DNA from: Fimbriosthenelais zetlandica
Lineage: Eukaryota
Length of the DNA: 64,000 nt
Assembly (NCBI GenBank): GCA_977030845.1
Contig: OZ365118.1
Span: 16,864,001 to 16,928,000 of the forward strand
Direction: 5' to 3'
In this document: piece after piece, positions 932 through 63,783 of the stretch
How the letters are laid out: each line of letters opens with the position of its first letter
Numbering within the stretch: the first letter of the stretch is position 1
The notes under the pieces: model-generated
Database searches by the model: none
The model's input: only the letters and a program-made list of their open reading frames with translations
What the model was told of the DNA's origin: nothing
Program-made: the position numbers and the translations under genes

Positions 932-1773
932 AATGCCTCCTTAGCTTTGGCACCGCTGGCCATCACATCAGACAGGAAGGAGATGATCGACTTCACTGAG
1001 CCTTTCTTCACTACCGGTTACTCTATCGTCATGCAGCGTCACACTCAGCGCCACTCCATGTTTCATCTACTCAGTCCTCTATCTCTCTTCGTGTGGGGCC
1101 TCATGGTCGTTGTCTTCCTTGTCATCAGTATGACACTTTACGTCGTTGACCGGCTGGCCCCTGGCAACGGCAATGAATCGTCCAAGCACCGCTTGACAGC
1201 CAGTGACAGCCTCTGGTTCACCTTCGCTTCTATGGTGCTGCGAGTGACTGACATCGTGCCCAGATCCATCTCCAGCAGGATCCTGGCTGGATCACTCTGG
1301 CTCTTCAGCATTATCATGATCTCCACATACACCGCCAACTTGGCGGCCTTCTTGACAGTGTTTCGGTTCAGTGCGCCGGTGCAGAGCATACAGGACTTGG
1401 CCTTGCAGAGCCATGTGACATATGGGACGGTGCGGGGCAGCCATGTTAGTGCCTTCTTTGAAAATAGCAAACTCCCCCATTTTCAAAGGATGTGGCATGT
1501 CATGTCCTCGGGAGACCAGGCTGGCATGGTGAATTCCACCCTGGAAGGGTTTGACATGGTCAGTCGGAGTGCTGGGGACTATGCCTTCCTCTGGGAGACC
1601 TACCAGATCCGACTGCGCACTAGTGTGCATTGTGACCTCTATGAGGTGGGGGAAACTTTTGGCCTCCGGGAGTATGGACTCGGGGTGCCCCAGGGCACTC
1701 ACTATCGTGATAAGCTTTCTATAGCTATACTTAGGCTGCGGGAGAACGGCAAGCTTCAGGAGTTAGAACATAG
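932..1773 (+). CDS. iGluR gene A, internal core exon (end of S1, M1, M2 pore loop, M3, most of S2); non-NMDA, delta/kainate-like subunit; gene incomplete at the 5' end
   Basis: Acceptor ttttttcacAG at 930-931 and donor AG|GTGAGT at 1774. 842 bp, phase 0 to phase 2. Translation has APLAITSDRKEMIDFTEPF (S1), WFTF...DIVPRS (M2), TYTANLAAFLT (M3), YGTVRGSHV and YAFLWE (S2) and YRDKLSIAILRLRENG. Confidence 0.95.
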
Positions 1774-5184: not shown

Positions 5185-5368
5185 GTGGTTTCATAACCGG
5201 AAGTGCAAGCCTGTCTCCCCCCGTGCTCACGCGGCCGATTCCATCTCCATCGAGGACGTGGCTGGACTTTTCATTATCTTGGGTGCAGGAGTTGTCCTTG
5301 CCTTGGGCACTTCATTATTTGAGTATTGCTATAGGATAAAAAGAAGACGGAAAGCCACCAAAAATAGG
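5185..5368 (+). CDS. iGluR gene A, M4 exon (end of S2, M4, basic juxtamembrane segment)
   Basis: Strong acceptor tctctcctctcttttttacAG at 5183-5184 and donor AGG|GTAAAC at 5369. 184 bp, phase 2 to phase 0, in frame with the previous exon: (R)WFHNRKCKPVSPRAHAADSISIEDVAGLFIILGAGVVLALGTSLFEYCYRIKRRRKATKNR. Not in the ORF track because it has no start codon. Confidence 0.92.
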
Positions 5369-6553
5369 GTAAACATACCATATTCGCTCTAGACGCTCTA
5401 AGTAAATTAAGCGCACACACAGTCTCAGCGACTCTATCCAGAAGATAGCGTGATGGCCCACCTATACCTTCAATACTGCCGGTAAATCAGTGCAGATGAT
5501 CTCCATTTCAAAATTCTTTCTCATAGAAGAAGTCTTTTTTGGTCTCTCTCTACTGCTCTTGTTTGATTCCAATTCAATCTGTTCCATCCAGCCAATGCAC
5601 ATATGTATGAACTTCTGATATAGGAAGGATATGTACAGGTGTAGTGTCTTACTACTATCTCAGTCATCTAATATACTGATTGGACCATTTGGTAGACTAG
5701 TTCAATACCTTACTCGATCCCACACTGTAGTGCATCTCTTCTTTAGAAAAGATTAATTGTGCATCTGGCCCCTATTTATTAATGATTAATGAGAAAGTGC
5801 ATATTCAGAGTAGAAATTATTCCAAATGAAAGTTTCTAATTCCCATGCACAGACCTTTAGCTTGTCGCCCCTGGAGTTTCTTTCCCCCATCAGCATTGTG
5901 CCCTGGGAATTAATGACTAGATCCTAGTGAGACGATAATACTCTAGTGTGCCATGAAATCATTTTGATATTAATCCGATTCCACCATTCATATTTTCTTC
6001 CTTTTCATTTTGTTTCATAATTCAACGGCAGGTAAGGTAATAACACATATTTAGAGGCATTCCTTTGAACCACTCCTTTGCTGAAGCAGTATTGTACCAC
6101 CGTTTATTGCTTTTCCGTTGAAATAGCCATTGTAAACTTGTTCGTAATGGATTACAAGCAGTTCAAATGGTTCATCTAAATACCCCTCTTTCCATTCTTG
6201 AAATTCATTTTGATTAAATTTTTCCATTAAGCTTAATGACACCCCTCTCTTAATGAAAGTAAATGTCGATATCTTTCTGGACCTTCCGTATTCAATGAAT
6301 GTTCTAAATGATGAATATAAGTCCTAATGATTGTCTCTGATGAAATTCTGGCTAATAATGCAATGGTAACTCTCCTATAGATTCATGTTGACTTGTATGA
6401 TAGCTGGGTGCCGTCCAGTGAGGGTGCTTGTGCTGGTCTCGTCCCTACATGTGTGCCATATATTTTCATGTAGAGATTGTAGTAGGCCGACAGTCACTCT
6501 GTAAGGGGGAGTGGCTGTTATTAGCGTTCGTCCACTCTTCTTACTTGTTGCAG

Positions 6554-6685
6554 AAAGTCCCCGAAGAGAGCGTCTACACCAAACCACTGTGCGACGGCAA
6601 CGTCTCCGGAGCACTCCAAATGGAGGAGCCATTCCTCTCCCCAGTCTCCTCCTACACGGGATCCAAACAAACCCAGATCTTCTGA
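6554..6685 (+). CDS. iGluR gene A, terminal coding exon (cytoplasmic tail ending SKQTQIF*)
   Basis: Acceptor cttcttacttgttgcAG at 6552-6553, phase 0, TGA at 6683-6685. KVPEESVYTKPLCDGNVSGALQMEEPFLSPVSSYTGSKQTQIF is clearly homologous to the last exon of gene B. Confidence 0.88.
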   Translation, partial: KVPEESVYTKPLCDGNVSGALQMEEPFLSPVSSYTGSKQTQIF

Positions 6686-50700: not shown

Positions 50701-52258
50701 TTAAGGGGTATTTTAGGGATTTATTTAGGAAGATAGCCTTGCTGGCACTGGGGCCATGCATTATCAATTAAGCCTGACCCGGAAGCATTTGCTGAACTGA
50801 TGCCATTTCGTTGCAAATGACAAACCCATTGCACATCTCTGACCATCCCTTGAATATCTGCATTGAAGCATTTTAAAATTCTCTATGCTCTCAGTCTTGG
50901 TTATTTCTCTTAAAGGTAGATGACAGGGGTTGGGGATGGGTGGGTGGTGGCTTAGATATCATATGATTGGATGAACGGATACGGGTGGCAGGTGGATGTG
51001 CGGGGGAAGGAGACGACATGCCAGTTGTACAAGCACGACATGTCAGCTGCGCTATATGGTGAGATAGGGAAGCATGAAGGCGTGGAAGGAAGGGGCAGGA
51101 TAGCGAGTATCTGCTCACATGACAGTTTTGTGTGGCGGACATGACAGTATTGTCAGAGTGAATGAGAAATGAGATAATCTCACACTTAAGTTTCTAACTG
51201 AAGCCTGAATGGGAAGGATGTTTTGTACTGGTGGGAAGTCAAGCAGAGGGAGCACATAACTGAGGAGGGAAGTCAGGAAGATTAATTCTTAAAACTTAAT
51301 GACAATATTCTCACCACCTCCTCCAAGGTGATCGATGGAGGCAATATTTTAAAGAATATTCCACAGGTCAATATTGTATTACGCATTTTTACGTCATTTG
51401 TTTGGTTGATCAAAACTAGTTCCTTTAATACGTCGAGTCTTAAATGTTACATATTTTATGGAAAATTGCTTCTAAAGGCCCAACTGCCCTGAAATAGATA
51501 ATGATGATGCTGTCATAGTGGTGACTGCCCTTTTGTTTAGTGGAATGTTGCCATTTATTATGGACTTCTTGGTCCGAACATCGTCTTGCAACTTCTGGCA
51601 TTATTTTGTACATCTATCATTAACCTTAAATATCTTGATATCGTTCATTATGTATGGACAACTGTGGGGAGGCTTTGATCAATGAAATGGCGAAAACTGT
51701 ACGATTTATGAAAACATTTTATTTTCTACAAAACATTTTATAGGTTGTATACTCAACACATATACCTAGTTTGCACGCATCCACACTTTCACTCTCCAGT
51801 ATGATACAGTGATAAATTGTCATGCACACTTTCGTATAATTTAATTTTTAAACGCGTGGGGAATCTCTCGCTCTGTAAAACCGTTCAGTTTGATTGGGAT
51901 AGTACAGCACTATAATATGCCTCGAAGGGGACAACGGTAAAACTATACACGTCCAAACGCTGTGCACTCTTCCTTTCTTTTTACATCAAAAAACTAAAAT
52001 ACAGACATTTCTCTATGCCCCCTTCCTTGATCAATCCAGACCTGAGTCTGGAGTTTTGTAATGGTACTTTTGATAAAGCCAAACGTATTTGGTTTTTGGC
52101 CAGAGGGATTCTTTGGCTGTGACGATTTAGGTAGAGAAGGCATTTGACTCCAGCCCTGCTCCCTCCTCTTCTCCTCGCCCCTCCACATCTCATGATCCAG
52201 ACTAATTCATGGTTGCTTAGCAACAGTATCCATGTCAAAAGTGACACGGCTGGTTTTT

Positions 52259-52283
52259 TTTATTTTAAGTACACCTTTTTATT
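52259..52283 (-). terminator. Candidate polyadenylation signals of gene B (3' UTR about 0.75 kb; another candidate at 51718-51723)
   Basis: Minus-strand AATAAA (TTTATT on +) at 52259-52264 and 52278-52283. Sequence only. Confidence 0.35.
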
Positions 52284-53027
52284 CTGTAAAAAGGCGCCGA
52301 TGGACTAGGCATAAAGAACTTCTCAAATATCGTGAAATATTCTTTATGAAAATGCAATAGGAACAGTTGAATGTTGAATATTGAAAAAGAAAATATTTAT
52401 ATTGCATCATTTCCTGGAATAGTGTGACAAATTATAGTCATTAAATAATTGCCACTCGATTATTGTCCTATTTGGCAATGTAAAGGGTCATCTATTTCCA
52501 TGATGACGTACGAGACACGCAGACGACATTTCCTGATGTTTTGACCTTACTCTTAGCATTCTGGTGCACCTTGCAAAAATGTCACGAAGTGGTCGAATCA
52601 GAAGTCAATTTGTGCAATTTAGTCCAGCTTTCTTTGGGCAGAAGCATGCTGTACTTGACCTGTTATGTTGCAACGTCTCAAACTTTTTAGCAGACGACTA
52701 TTTTCAGCGGAACAACACAAGTGTACTGGCGTAACCTTGGCAATCATATCCACTAGCAGTGTTAGGCATGAGGAGTGAAGCAAGATAACAGCAACGACTG
52801 ACCCACACTCGCCCTTCAAATAACAGGCCCTGGCTTTTAAAGGTCATTGAGGAAGGGCTTTATTCCTTCCTTCACCTAGTTCTCTATTAAACAGAGAAAG
52901 CGGCCTTAGTGATAGCCTATACGTCGTCTGCTCACAACCGGCAATGGACAAGATAGCAACTGTGTCTTGCATTAAAGGCAACTGATTTTTATATGTATTT
53001 CCCTTGATCCTTCCCTTCATCCCTCCA

Positions 53028-53165
53028 TCAAAAGATGTTGGTTTGTTTGGAGGTGGAGTAGTTGACGGGCGTCATGAATTGTTGAGTCTCCTCCATTTGG
53101 ATCGCGCCGGCTGAAACATTACCGTCACAGAGGGGCTTGGCGGAGATCCCTTCTTCTGGAACCTT
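53028..53165 (-). CDS. iGluR gene B, terminal coding exon (cytoplasmic tail ending SKQTNIF*)
   Basis: Acceptor tcttttgccttacAG (53167-53166), phase 0, TGA at 53030-53028: KVPEEGISAKPLCDGNVSAGAIQMEETQQFMTPVNYSTSKQTNIF. Confidence 0.88.
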   Translation of the reverse strand, partial: KVPEEGISAKPLCDGNVSAGAIQMEETQQFMTPVNYSTSKQTNIF

Positions 53166-54614
53166 CTGTAAGGCAAAAGAAACATACTTGATATCTTCAA
53201 AACAATTTATCAAAGGCGTTGTCAAAAGGGCATATCGAATGAAACAGCTATTGAATTATGCAGGTCTGGCAATTGCTAATATCATCGACAGCGGTGATAT
53301 TTATCGCATGCACCCCCAAGAGTTCCTACAGTTTCCATTAAGCTTCTCTGTGGAGAAACCGAGAGCAAACGGTTAGCCAACTAATTACTGTATGCCTGAG
53401 GAAACTTGGCGTTATTTTCTCCCCAAGAGGAATCGGTGCAGTTCCTCTGAGCGCTCGTGTAACGTGTGAAATGGTTTGGCAAATAGTTGGGGGCTTTGGC
53501 GCGGCGAGCACTTGAAGGAGAGGGACGCCCAATAAAAAACAGCTGCACTTTGCTCTGACATTGGCAGCGTAAACAATTGTGGGAGCGTCTCCCCAATTGG
53601 TCAGCCTTCCACTGCAATTTACTGTTTCGGCAATGAGCCGTCATGGGCAATTAGGGCTTAACAGTGTTGGAGACAATAAAAGGAACCTCAGGAGTCGGGG
53701 GTGTGTTTAACGGTGCCCGCCTTCCAAAAGTATGGCCGCACGCACAGACATAAAAACCCAAGTCACAGGAGAGGCTAACAATATCCCTTTTAAGGAGACT
53801 TTGATGGCTGCTTTAGTACAAGATATTGCGGTAGTTTTGCTATCAAGATGCTAAAATATGGCACTGACACTTGGGTTTTATTCACTGGCCTTGACGACCG
53901 CTGGGTTTGAAGGTGGAGCAAGACGTCATAAGGGAGATAGGTTTTAAGAGATTTAGTGCTTACACTTAAAATCCTTTTTGGAGATAACAGTATTTGTTTG
54001 AGTCCTTTCTGATGGCATTGTTGGGAGAAAATTGGCTTTATCTAACGTGGACAATAAATTTACCCCCAGCTCTCCTGGAATGTGTGGGAATAGGTGTGTT
54101 TAGAGTAGCAAGTGATCATACCCACAACTGGCATATTATATATGAGTGTAGCCTACTCAAATGATAGGATGTTTTTGGCAAAATAATTGAATTTTAGAAC
54201 ATGCTGCACTTTCTCAGATACTCTCATCCACTATGACATTCAATGGAATATAACATTATGTAGATTAGATTAATTGAATCAGTACCGGAAATACAATACA
54301 AAAAGAGGTAAATGTCCTCGAAAAGCAGATCTTTCTTATCAGAACAATCTTTGACCAAAAGTGATTGTGCTGGTAAAAGGGGTTAAATGATTCATAAACC
54401 GAATACACCATTTGCCTTTTTCGTGTTAATTGTATGAAGGTGTTAAATCATGTCCCGTCTGGTCTAATGAGACTTGAGTGCTGTATGGTGGTCACAATCC
54501 ATGCCCCAACTCCCCATCTTACTTAGAGGTTACTACAGAGTAAGGCCACAAATGGGCCCACCATACATCAAGTCTGAATAAAGCCAATTTATTGTTACTT
54601 GTCACAATAATGTA

Positions 54615-54731: not shown

Positions 54732-55435
54732 ATCCAAAATAATATACTTGAATAAGAGTTGTGATAGAATTCATGTTGATACTGCCAAGATAATCCAGAC
54801 CTAATGGGGTAAGTAATCCTCAGAGAATAATATGTGTACAAGTTTGTATATGACAAAAGGCATCAAGTGACCCAGTACTGTATTGTGCTAGCACTGAGAG
54901 CACACACATTTTTGCTTCCCATCAAGCGATCACATAATTGCCTAAAAGAATGCCGTGCAGCTTTGTAGTCGAGTGTAGAGAGAGAGCCTTTAATACAAGC
55001 TATGTGAAGAAGCTCTTCTTGAAAGGACCTTTTGTCTGTACGCTTCACAAATACAACTCTCCGCTATTCATTATTCCTCTAATCCCTGACTGTTTTACCT
55101 TCCCAGAGAAAGACAAATAGTCTCACTTCATTTGTTTGTCAGTAAAATGGACTTGAATTTCTTATTAAAGTTTCTGATCCGAGAAACTTGCTGTTAATGA
55201 TCCTATTTTGTCTAAAATATGACACTACTTCCCCATCTTAATTCCCGTCTATAGACATCTCTCATTGAAAATTACCTCGAGATGAGAGTTTGAGCAGAAA
55301 GTTGCTCTAAGCTATTTCAGATTATATGTTGGGCATTGCATAATAATTCTACGAGCTCTTGCATTTAGCCCATTATAACTGGCCACTACACTAATACCCC
55401 TATCACTGCCTCTCATCTCGTATTCCCATACTTAC

Positions 55436-55619
55436 CCTGTTTTTCGTTTTGACCTTTTTACGGCGTGTTCGACACGCATACTCAATAATAGAGGCGAAGA
55501 TGGCTACGAGTATACCCAGAGCCAGGAAGATGAAGATGCCCGCCATGTTGTGGACGGACAATGACTGGGAGGTCAGGGTCGGGCGGCTCCGGTCTGGGCA
55601 CTTGTTCTCAGGCCACCAC
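55436..55619 (-). CDS. iGluR gene B, M4 exon
   Basis: Acceptor tcatattctAG (55621-55620) and donor AGG|GTAAGT (55435). 184 bp, the same length and phases as the gene A M4 exon: (R)WWPENKCPDRSRPTLTSQSLSVHNMAGIFIFLALGILVAIFASIIEYACRTRRKKVKTKNR. Confidence 0.93.
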
Positions 55620-56413: not shown

Positions 56414-57285
56414 CTGACCTCCATTTCATGTAGACGCCCATTTTCGGCAAGTCGTAAAAGGGCCATGCTTAGCGTATCTCTGTAAGACGCCCCCTGTGGG
56501 ACGGCAATGGCAAAAGACTTGAGGTCAATCTGCTCCACTATCTCTAGTAAGTCACAATTCTCATTGACCTTCGACCTCACACTGGTAGACTCCCAGATAA
56601 ATGCATACGAGCCTTCCTTGGCACTGTTGACCTTCTGGAAGCCCAGTTCGGGGTCGTTGACCATGACGCTAGGTACAGCAGAGCTCATGGTGTGCCATAA
56701 GCTCTGGTACTGGTGTATACGACTCTGCTGCAAGAAAGCTGTCACTTGACTGTTCCTTACTGTGCCATACTGTATTCTCGTCTGAGTGGCGAGATCTCGT
56801 AATGAGTGTATACTGGGCACCTCCACTGAGGACACAGTTAGCAGCGCTGCAAAGTTCGCCGTGTACGACGATATGACCATGAGACTGAAGAACCACAGAG
56901 CTCCTGCTAATATCCTCCCCGATATAGTCCTCGGGTTGATATCTACAGTTCTCAGGATCATTGAAGTAAAAGTGAACCAAATGCTTTTGTCGGCCCCGAT
57001 GAGGCGGAAGCGGGAACCTTGGGTGTTGTTTGGTTCAAAGTTGGAATAAAAGGCGGGGGCGACACGGTCAATGACGTAGAAGGTGATGCTGAAGAGGGCC
57101 AGTACGCCCAGGAGGACAATCCAGACCAGGGGTGAGAGAGGGTTGAGGAAGAGAAAGAGAGAGGAGCTGGTCTTGGCCCGTTTCATCACCACACTCAGGC
57201 CAGTTGTCTTGAATGTTTTAGTGAAATCCACAACTTCCTCCAAGTCTGAGGTGGTTATGATGGGCCCGATACCCATAGCAGCCGT
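56414..57285 (-). CDS. iGluR gene B, internal core exon (end of S1, M1, M2, M3, most of S2)
   Basis: Acceptor attttctccctacAG (57287-57286) and donor AG|GTAGGT (56413). 872 bp, phase 0 to phase 2. Has VVDFTKTF, LNPLSPLVW, WFTFTSMILRTVDINPRT, SYTANFAALLT, SLRDLATQTRIQYGTVRNSQV, YAFIWE and YRDTLS. About half the residues are identical to gene A by hand alignment. Confidence 0.95.
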
Positions 57286-60217: not shown

Positions 60218-60421
60218 CCCATTAGAGACTTGTCCTACCAGGCCGTCCCATGAGCCGTTCCCAAGGCGGGAGCCAAGTCGGCCTGCCGGAGCCGTATACA
60301 GCTCGTATGTATATCCGAGTAGCTCAGCCAGAGCCTTGAGCAGGTCAATACAAAACCCCTCATATTTCTGGTTCCCATGGAAACGGTGGTGGTCTGAGCG
60401 CAGCTGGACGAAGGGACTTTC
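60218..60421 (-). CDS. iGluR gene B, S1 exon
   Basis: Acceptor ...tgtccctgcAG (60423-60422) and donor GGG|GTAAGA (60217). 204 bp, phase 0/0: ESPFVQLRSDHHRFHGNQKYEGFCIDLLKALAELLGYTYELYTAPAGRLGSRLGNGSWDGLVGQVSNG. Has the canonical G[FY]CIDLL motif. ELYTAPAGRLG resembles the delta-type EIYxAPDxxYG. Confidence 0.93.
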
Positions 60422-63642: not shown

Positions 63643-63783
63643 CTGAACCATGACCACTCTGATATGTTCGCCGCGGAGTGGTTCCTTGGCCGGGGTGGCA
63701 TGCTCCGGCGCCACCTTTTGTACTGTCAGATTCATATGCAGCCTTTTCTGAGCATCCGTCTCTGACGAATTCCAGAATCCGAC
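63643..63783 (-). CDS. iGluR gene B, exon at the ATD-S1 junction; gene continues beyond the window end
   Basis: Minus-strand acceptor ttctcttcgcctcAG (63785-63784) and donor CAG|GTAACT (63642). 141 bp, phase 0/0: VGFWNSSETDAQKRLHMNLTVQKVAPEHATPAKEPLRGEHIRVVMVQ. Joins the next exon as VVMVQ|ESPFV, matching the iGluR VTTILE[ES]PYV motif. Confidence 0.85.

What the first reader, a model, noticed from the sequence alone, without database searches (positions are those of the whole stretch)
57241..57243. Gene B lacks the agonist-binding arginine: a probable ligand-less iGluR subunit
Seen: S1 reads GPIITTSDLEEVVDF in gene B, against APLAITSDRKEMIDF in gene A and APLTITLVREEVIDF in GluA2. The Arg equivalent to GluA2 R485 is Leu (codon TTG at 57243-57241), the T480 equivalent is Ile, and the Y450 equivalent is Leu (GRLG in the 60218-60421 exon). 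Established: this Arg binds the alpha-carboxylate of glutamate, glycine and D-serine and is nearly invariant in amino-acid-gated iGluRs. The reading frame, splice sites, S2 cysteines and C-tail are intact, so this does not look like a pseudogene. Inference: B is a structural or modulatory subunit, a receptor for a non-amino-acid ligand, or a ligand-independent channel, possibly partnering gene A.
Basis: partly seen in the sequence, partly recalled or inferred. Interest (0 to 1): 0.72.

Follow-up and report, generated by a model that had tools for sequence, protein, structure and literature searches.

The report
Glutamate-receptor subunit lacking its ligand-gripping arginine
A worm-type animal genome has an intact, strongly conserved glutamate-receptor-family channel gene in which the arginine that normally grips amino-acid transmitters is a leucine; such variants are already known in this receptor superfamily, so it is a good candidate for testing, not a new kind of receptor.

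Summary
Codon TTG at 57243-57241 (minus strand) lines up with the agonist-binding arginine (GluA2 R485, GluK2 R523).

It is not an assembly error or a decaying gene. Three orthologues from other assemblies (97, 83 and 78% identical) all have Leu there, encoded by CTC, CTG and CTG. dN/dS is 0.03-0.06 and synonymous sites are saturated.

Only the Arg-to-Leu change is specific to gene B. The Ile/Met at position 480 and the Leu at position 450 also occur in the nearest Arg-bearing sister sequences.

B and A are old paralogues in a spiralian-only clade that is sister to AMPA plus kainate receptors. This is probably the published "lophotrochozoan Phi" clade. Their tail-to-tail arrangement recurs in a second species.

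Both genes end in a further, highly conserved C-tail exon (B: 53165-53028).

B's binding domain is not relaxed relative to its channel compared with A's, so "ligand-less" is unproven. The most likely role is a subunit that cannot bind amino acids in the usual way and works in heteromers. A receptor for a new ligand is the main rival.

Arg-lacking iGluRs are already reported (about 3% of animal iGluRs). No expression data could be obtained.

The parts
57241..57243 (-). Leu codon (TTG) at the position of the agonist alpha-carboxylate-binding Arg (GluA2 R485, GluK2 R523)
   Evidence: Orthologues use CTC, CTG and CTG for the same Leu.
63643..63783 (-). Gene B exon: end of the amino-terminal domain and linker to S1 (VGFWNSSE...VVMVQ)
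   Evidence: Open frame with CAG acceptor and GTAACT donor. Conserved in L019 and L020.
60218..60421 (-). Gene B S1 exon (first half of the ligand-binding domain). Contains 'GRLG', i.e. R449 and L450.
   Evidence: Pfam PF10613 at 60.8 bits against a cut-off of 30. Junctions. Comparison with orthologues and sisters.
56414..57285 (-). Gene B long exon: end of S1 (with the Leu), M1, pore loop (Leu at the Q/R site, Arg at +1, D590 kept), M3 gate 'SYTANFAAL', and all of S2
   Evidence: PF00060 at 86 bits. GluK2 at E 3e-58. Junctions. dN/dS 0.03-0.04.
55436..55619 (-). Gene B exon: WWPENKC (second S2 cysteine), M4, start of the cytoplasmic tail (...RTRRKKVKTKNR)
   Evidence: The AGG|GTRAGT donor is conserved in all four species, and the read-through frames are not conserved.
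53028..53165 (-).
   Evidence: Polypyrimidine tract and CAG acceptor in all four species. 45 of 45 residues are identical in L019 although 26 of 29.5 synonymous sites differ. The Capitella relative ends ...SKHTNIF.
932..1773 (+). Gene A long exon, homologous to B's, with the Arg kept (APLAITSDRKEMIDF). Same intron phases as B.
   Evidence: 48% identical to B. Orthologues P0304 (99%) and P0305 (87%).
5185..5368 (+). Gene A M4 exon
6554..6685 (+). Gene A terminal exon, homologous to B's tail exon (KVPEES...SKQTQIF*)
   Evidence: tblastn E 1.5e-14; also present in the A orthologue locus L023. Acceptor and stop read.

Best explanation
Gene B is a real, selectively maintained channel subunit of a spiralian (annelid, mollusc, nemertean) branch of the AMPA/kainate/delta/phi iGluR group.

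In an ancestor of at least four sampled genomes, the Arg that anchors the alpha-carboxylate of every amino-acid agonist was replaced by Leu. One base change (CGN to CTN) is enough. The Leu has been kept since.

Shown: the residue, its conservation, the intact pore, gate and M4, the amino-terminal domain exons, and a very strongly conserved cytoplasmic tail.

Inferred: without this Arg the cleft cannot hold glutamate, glycine, D-serine or GABA in the canonical pose. B therefore most likely acts as a subunit that does not bind an amino acid itself. It would co-assemble with Arg-bearing subunits (A is the obvious candidate) and tune gating, trafficking or anchoring of a heteromer, rather as binding-deficient subunits do in other iGluR and IR complexes.
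For: - The Leu aligns with GluK2 R523 / GluA2 R485.
- Arg occurs in 135 of 137 aligned representatives. All Arg-bearing sister clades otherwise share B's pocket: S653, Q/H654, V/I655, W704, D/E705.
- Orthologues L021, L019 and L020 keep Leu with different codons.
- NG86 dN/dS is 0.025-0.057 over 351-575 codons, with dS at least 1.1.
- The tail exon is 100% identical across saturated synonymous divergence.
- All five in-window exons have canonical splice signals.
- Amino-terminal-domain exons were found upstream, and an intron absent in L020 joins two of them in frame.
- A and B lie tail-to-tail on one contig in a second species, 55 kb apart here and 70 kb there.
- A and B share the same C-terminal exon.
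- The genome has only four genes of this long-exon type, and the other three keep Arg.
Against: - No expression, binding or current data exist. No sequencing run was listed.
- B's S2 lobe is not relaxed relative to its membrane part compared with A: the S2/TMD divergence ratio is about 1.7 in B and 1.6 in A. The acidic 705 and S653/V655 are kept. A purely silent cleft might be expected to drift more.
- Conserved linkage and a shared tail are weak evidence for co-assembly.
- A and B are old paralogues.
- With only four orthologues, pocket-specific constraint cannot be separated from background.
Confidence: 0.45

Rival explanations
1. B is a receptor for a different ligand, one without an alpha-carboxylate or bound in a new pose (an amine, betaine-like or sulfonate compound, or an environmental chemical). 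It would use the retained acidic 705 and the now more hydrophobic upper lobe (L450, I/M480, L485).
For: - E/D705, W704, S653 and V655 are conserved in all four B orthologues.
- The binding domain is under the same relative constraint as A's.
- Overall dN/dS is about 0.04 in the exon holding S2.
- Precedent from my own knowledge and from the abstract listed (bioRxiv 10.64898/2026.09.30.755715): chemosensory IRs derive from iGluRs and are divergently tuned to non-amino-acid cues. That many lack one or more of the ligand-contact residues R, T and D/E is from my own knowledge only.
Against: - Only one pocket residue differs from Arg-bearing sisters. A new specificity usually involves several changes.
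- No candidate ligand can be derived from sequence.
- No structure model of the spliced binding domain could be made here.
Confidence: 0.25
2. B still binds a conventional amino-acid agonist, with another basic residue taking over the carboxylate contact. Candidates are R449 next to the lid residue, or R651 in the lower lobe.
For: R449 ('GRLG'/'GRMG') is present in all three B orthologues with an S1 exon. R651 is conserved across the family.
Against: - Both arginines also occur in Arg485-bearing relatives: P0171 has 'DRLG', and R651 is family-wide, vertebrate delta included. They are therefore not compensations that arose with the loss.
- From my own knowledge, mutating this Arg abolishes agonist action in AMPA, kainate, NMDA and delta receptors.
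Confidence: 0.13
3. B forms or contributes to a ligand-independent (constitutively open, leak-type) channel because hydrophobic replacements in the cleft mimic the occupied state.
For: There is precedent. Hydrophobic residues at the position equivalent to GluN1 D732 make GluN1 ligand-independent, and the natural Tyr variant in Trichoplax AKDF-19383 is a leak channel inhibited by glycine (bioRxiv 10.1101/2023.08.03.551817). B's upper lobe has three hydrophobic residues at contact positions.
Against: - The precedent concerns the acidic 705/732 position, which B keeps as Glu or Asp.
- Two of the three hydrophobic residues are shared with Arg-bearing sisters.
- The M3 change (SYTANFAAL) is also shared with those sisters.
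Confidence: 0.1
4. It is an assembly or sequencing error, or a decaying gene copy.
For: None was found. No reads could be laid because no run was listed.
Against: - The same Leu occurs in three independent assemblies with three different codons.
- There are no stops or frameshifts in 12 located exons.
- dN/dS is 0.03-0.06.
- The tail exon is perfectly conserved.
Confidence: 0.02

Closest known systems
Phi-class (GluF) and other non-vertebrate AKDF iGluRs that lack Arg485 or the acidic 705 (Ramos-Vicente et al. 2018, PMC6307864; scallop GluF, Zeng et al. 2021, PMC8437780)
   Same: - Full-length iGluR architecture.
- No Gln at the Q/R site.
[quoted passage not shown]
- Some members have lost a backbone-anchoring residue: 28 of 122 proteins from the newly described groups, 'particularly common' in amphioxus Phi, and 1 of 10 scallop GluF proteins.
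- B's closest named full-length relative is a Pecten protein from a mollusc-wide clade.
   Different: - B belongs to an unannotated annelid-type subclade.
- Here the loss is dated to one lineage and shown to be under purifying selection with an Arg-bearing sister. The surveys did not examine that.
- Class membership could not be confirmed against deuterostome Phi references.
Chemosensory ionotropic receptors (IRs) of protostomes
   Same: They derive from iGluRs. Tuning subunits lack one or more of the R, T and D/E ligand contacts and work only as heteromers with co-receptors (own knowledge; abstract listed).
   Different: B keeps an amino-terminal domain and sits inside a clade of Arg-bearing iGluR-like genes that is sister to AMPA plus kainate. 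Only the Arg is lost. No IR reference was placed in the tree.
Trichoplax AKDF-19383 leak channel (Seljeset et al., bioRxiv 10.1101/2023.08.03.551817)
   Same: A natural, evolutionarily retained hydrophobic replacement of a backbone-contact residue in an AKDF receptor, with a clear functional consequence.
   Different: A different residue is involved: the amino-group contact (D732/E705 position) rather than the carboxylate contact. B keeps that acidic residue.
Placozoan GluE2-alpha epsilon receptors lacking R485 (Aleotti et al. 2025, PMC12226733)
   Same: Orthologue group missing R485. The authors state the consequences are unknown.
   Different: It is in the Epsilon subfamily, not AKDF, and in a different phylum.
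Delta receptors (GluD1/2)
   Same: The pocket signature is S653 / small 654 / V655 / W704 / D705. It is seen in the vertebrate delta-1 row and throughout B's family.
   Different: Delta receptors keep the Arg. B's family is not in the delta branch of the tree.

Membership tests
Ionotropic glutamate receptor superfamily | Ligand-gated channel domain (Pfam PF00060) with M1, pore loop, M3 and M4 | tested here: met
   PF00060 at 86.1 bits against a cut-off of 30.8. The M4 exon was found.
Ionotropic glutamate receptor superfamily | Bilobed S1/S2 binding domain (PF10613) with the S2 disulfide | tested here: met
   The S1 exon hits PF10613 at 60.8 bits against a cut-off of 30. Both cysteines are present.
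Ionotropic glutamate receptor superfamily | SYTANLAAF gate motif | tested here: met
   SYTANFAAL matches 7 of 9 positions. This variant is shared with Arg-bearing sister sequences.
Ionotropic glutamate receptor superfamily | Amino-terminal domain | tested here: inconclusive
   A family HMM hits profile positions 77-347 in exons at window +64.4 to +91.6 kb. About 76 N-terminal profile positions and the signal peptide were not located.
Amino-acid-gated iGluR (functional class) | Arg485 that binds the agonist alpha-carboxylate | tested here: not met
   Leu in B and in three orthologues.
Amino-acid-gated iGluR (functional class) | Acidic residue at 705 that binds the agonist alpha-amino group | tested here: met
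   Glu in three of the B sequences and Asp in the fourth.
Phi class (GluF) of the AKDF subfamily | Phylogenetic position: bilaterian clade beside AMPA and kainate, outside delta | tested here: inconclusive
   A 49-sequence spiralian-only clade (support 100/100) is sister to AMPA plus kainate (100/99). This fits the 'single clade of lophotrochozoan phi receptors' of PMC12226733. No labelled deuterostome Phi sequence was in the tree, and 'AKDF group II' is not excluded.
Phi class (GluF) of the AKDF subfamily | No Gln at the Q/R site (Q586) | tested here: met
   Leu at 586 and Arg at 587 in A, B and their subclade.
Chemosensory IRs | Membership of the IR clade; most members lack the amino-terminal domain | tested here: not met
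   B has amino-terminal-domain exons and nests among Arg-bearing iGluR-like genes. No IR references were included, so the clade test itself was not run.
Pseudogene | Frame disruptions or neutral evolution | tested here: not met
   No stops in 12 located exons. dN/dS is 0.025-0.057.

The most novel reading that the evidence does not exclude
B is not a silent subunit. It is an iGluR whose cleft has been retuned to a transmitter or cue that has no alpha-carboxylate. It would use the retained acidic 705 and a hydrophobic upper lobe, making an AKDF-type synaptic-style receptor (with amino-terminal domain and conserved scaffold-binding tail) gated by a non-amino-acid ligand.
Probability: 0.25. Interest if true: 0.7.

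Novelty: new member of a known kind. Interest (0 to 1): 0.4.

Why it matters
How iGluR subunits that have lost a backbone-anchoring residue work is an open question. Surveys report them in several clades, and the authors say the consequences are unknown.

This case is unusually clean for an experiment:
- There is a single pocket change (Arg to Leu) on an otherwise unchanged pocket.
- An Arg-bearing sister group provides the natural control.
- There is an obvious revertant (Leu to Arg).
- There is a linked Arg-bearing paralogue with the same cytoplasmic tail as a candidate partner.
- Purifying selection is strong, so the protein must do something.

It does not change the picture of the family.

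Tried and rejected
- **Read and expression evidence.** Two searches for sequencing runs with the 881-base exon (kinds 'any' and 'rna') listed none. No reads could be laid, so expression and the raw-read check of the codon are untested. The independent assemblies replace the latter.
- **Full-length spliced relatives.** The exhaustive representative search gave no protein more than 45% identical. No spliced B-lineage protein or transcript product therefore appeared among the representatives.
- **Structure of the binding pocket.** Not attempted. The pocket is split over two exons, a spliced sequence has no reference, and long sequences may not be typed. Folding the long exon alone would not show the cleft.
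- **Complex prediction for A+B.** Not sent. Any two iGluR channel parts are likely to dock, so a pass would not separate heteromer from homomer.
- **Class assignment through paper supplements.** The Capitella relative (ELU00163, '169825') is in the sequence file of PMC12226733, but its clade label is only in a figure. It is absent from the Ramos-Vicente lists.
- **Alternative Arg-bearing copy of the exon.** The family HMM found none.
- **RNA editing as a rescue.** Rejected. Leu (TTG, CTN) to Arg needs T to G at the second codon position, which is not an A-to-I change.
- **First-pass 3' end at 55403.** Rejected in favour of the spliced terminal exon.
- **Taxon.** The taxon of the genome was not established. 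The nearest named proteins are from Capitella and Owenia (annelids), molluscs and nemerteans.

Full report
**Observation.**
- The minus strand around 57285-57241 begins an exon, after a CAG acceptor, that translates T-A-A-M-G-I-G-P-I-I-T-T-S-D-L-E-E-V-V-D-F. The Leu codon TTG occupies 57243-57241.
- A phmmer search of the 292-residue exon against all PDB chains gives GluK2 as best hit (E 3e-58). Its printed alignment puts this Leu opposite the Arg of 'APLAITYVREKVIDF'.
- The exon hits Pfam PF00060, and the upstream S1 exon hits PF10613 above the curated cut-off.
- In a multiple alignment indexed on an AMPA-type sequence, B has P478, I480, L485, E486, S653, Q654, V655, W704, E705 and F732. Its gate motif is SYTANFAAL, and its pore has Leu at the Q/R site, Arg at +1 and Asp at 590.
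- The S1 exon reads 'GRLG' where GluA2 has 'GKYG'.

**How unusual the residue is.**
- Of the 150 best of 4,593 hits in an exhaustive search of 1.84 billion representative proteins, 137 align at this column: 135 have Arg, one His and one Asn.
- A published count gives 97% conservation over 204 animal iGluRs.
- The window's genome has four genes with this long-exon structure (B, A and two on other regions). Those, and the kainate-type genes seen, all have Arg except B.

**Gene model.**
- Inside the window, B has five exons on the minus strand: 63783-63643, 60421-60218, 57285-56414, 55619-55436 and 53165-53028. All have AG acceptors, and the first four have GT donors.
After '...KTKNR' every orthologue has AGG|GTRAGT, the read-through frames are unrelated and stop after 3-13 codons in three of the four species, and about 2 kb downstream all four species have a pyrimidine tract, CAG and a 45-codon exon ending ...SKQTNIF-stop.
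- Upstream, beyond the window's end, a family HMM and orthologue comparison locate amino-terminal-domain exons. In window numbering they lie at about 64565-64461, 65152-65029, 65655-65540, 72007-71945, 72816-72625 and 91591-91328.
- The two exons at 65 kb are fused in the L020 species. That intron loss confirms the splice prediction.
- The LINE element at 77924-83774 (noted before by the scan) therefore sits in an intron.
- The first roughly 76 profile positions and the signal peptide were not found.

**Orthologues.**
- A word-indexed search with the exon found single-exon gene calls from unannotated assemblies at 97, 83 and 78% identity (P0167, P0168, P0169).
- Reading their contigs upstream of the called start shows GPIMTTSDLEEVVDF, GSIMTTSDLEEVVDF and GPILITSDLEEVIDY. 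The Leu is kept, encoded by CTC, CTG and CTG against TTG here.
- Nei-Gojobori estimates over all alignable exons give pN 0.028-0.142 against pS 0.58-0.73. That is dN/dS 0.025-0.057, with synonymous sites at or near saturation even for the 97% pair.
- The terminal exon is 45 of 45 residues identical to L019 although 26 of 29.5 synonymous sites differ.
- This excludes an assembly error and a decaying copy.

**When and what changed.**
- In a maximum-likelihood tree of 71 sequences, the four Leu sequences form one clade (100/100).
- That clade sits in an unresolved trio with two Arg-bearing clades (P0170-P0173 and P0002/P0310/P0004). The trio is sister to the clade that contains A.
- The Arg-bearing sisters have the same S653, H/Q654, V/I655, W704 and D705, and P0170-P0173 also share the '..YTANFAA.' gate variant. 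P0171-P0173 have Met at 480, and P0171 has 'DRLG' at 449-450.
The only pocket change on B's stem is Arg to Leu.
- Sister Arg codons are AGG, CGT and CGC. CGN to CTN is a single step.
- B's stem branch (0.30) is no longer than A's (0.33).
- A second, independent loss (Arg to His) occurs in P0306 in the A-like clade.

**Family placement.**
- A, B and the two other paralogues fall in a 49-sequence clade (100/100). Its named members are only molluscs, nemerteans and annelids (Pecten, Octopus, Aplysia 'GluR8', Lineus, Tubulanus, Owenia, Capitella). The clade is sister to AMPA plus kainate (100/99).
- Amphioxus and starfish 'delta-like' proteins and vertebrate delta-1 lie outside.
- This matches published descriptions of a lophotrochozoan Phi clade (PMC8437780; PMC12226733) and the rule that no Phi subunit has Gln at 586.
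- I had no labelled deuterostome Phi sequence, so membership is probable, not shown.

**Relation to gene A.**
- A (+ strand; exons 932-1773, 5185-5368 and 6554-6685 in the window, the rest upstream) has the same exon structure and phases.
- A and B are convergent, with long exons 55 kb apart. In assembly ERZ26168297 their orthologues lie on the same 252-kb contig, also convergent, 70 kb apart.
- Both end in homologous tail exons (B ...SKQTNIF, A ...SKQTQIF, Capitella ...SKHTNIF), which suggests a shared intracellular partner.
- A is more constrained than B. Against the same two species, dN is 0.005 and 0.098 for A and 0.030 and 0.151 for B's homologous exon.
- The excess is not concentrated in the binding domain. 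Divergence in S2 against M1-M3 is 25% against 15% in B and 14% against 9% in A.

**Interpretation.**
- Shown: B is a functional gene for a pore-forming iGluR-type subunit that has lacked the carboxylate-anchoring Arg for a long time.
- Inferred from established receptor biochemistry: it cannot hold an alpha-amino acid or GABA in the canonical pose.
- The reading I rank first (0.45) is a subunit that does not itself bind an amino acid and works in heteromers with Arg-bearing subunits such as A. This fits the single-residue change, the conserved linkage and the shared tail.
- The retained acidic 705 and the unrelaxed S2 lobe keep a retuned, non-carboxylate ligand site (0.25) well alive.
- Continued amino-acid binding through another arginine (0.13) is weakened because R449 and R651 also occur in Arg485-bearing relatives.
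- A constitutive channel (0.10) has a precedent at a different residue.
- Error or pseudogene is about 0.02.

**Novelty.**
- iGluR-family proteins without this Arg are documented:
  - 28 of 122 proteins of the newly defined groups, especially amphioxus Phi;
  - one of ten scallop GluF proteins;
  - placozoan GluE2-alpha, 'consequences unknown';
  - about 3% of a 204-gene survey;
  - many chemosensory IRs (own knowledge).
- In the papers I read I found no functional data for any Phi-type receptor.
- This is therefore a new, well-supported member of a known kind and a tidy experimental case, not a surprise to a specialist.
- The scan had recorded only this same stretch before (s1-207678).

Noticed in passing
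window 5369-5389 (+), and L023 just after 17533: In gene A the unspliced read-through after the M4 exon encodes ...NRVNIPYSL-stop here and ...NRVKIPYSL-stop in the 87% orthologue, with synonymous differences between them. A may therefore have two alternative C-termini: this short one, and the spliced tail exon at 6554-6685. B's read-through is not conserved.
   Followed up: partly
window 53028-53165 (-) and 6554-6685 (+): The shared C-terminal exon of B and A (KVPEE...PLCDGN...QMEE...SKQT[N/Q]IF) is the most conserved part of B and resembles the C-terminus of a Capitella relative (...SKHTNIF). It is probably a docking motif for an unknown intracellular partner.
   Followed up: partly
P0306 (ENA contig of 3.1 Mb), A-like clade: A second, independent natural loss of the same Arg (to His: ...LTVTSQHQRFIDF) occurs in this spiralian family.
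   Followed up: partly
window +77924 to +83774 (beyond the window end; loci L002/L005), minus strand: The intact LINE with a NADAR-fused ORF1, already noted by the scan, lies inside the roughly 18.5-kb intron of gene B between the exons at about 91.4 kb and 72.8 kb, in the same orientation as the gene.
   Followed up: partly
L020:3906-4145: Two amino-terminal-domain exons that are separated by an intron of about 390 bases in the window's genome (65540 to 65152) are contiguous in the 78% orthologue. This is an intron loss or gain between related species.
   Followed up: yes
window about 51700-53940 (-), against L021:6150-8450: The 2 kb flanking B's terminal exon (about 0.8 kb of the last intron and 1.3 kb beyond the stop codon) matches the closest species in all three reading frames, meaning nucleotide-level conservation, even though coding synonymous sites differ by about 57%. 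It may be a conserved intron segment, 3' UTR or regulatory block.
   Followed up: no
window 56900-56960 (-), and the family alignment: The whole A/B subclade has Leu at the Q/R site followed by Arg (..LR..D), not Gln-Gln. An Arg one position after the selectivity-filter tip could affect calcium permeability and polyamine block.
   Followed up: no
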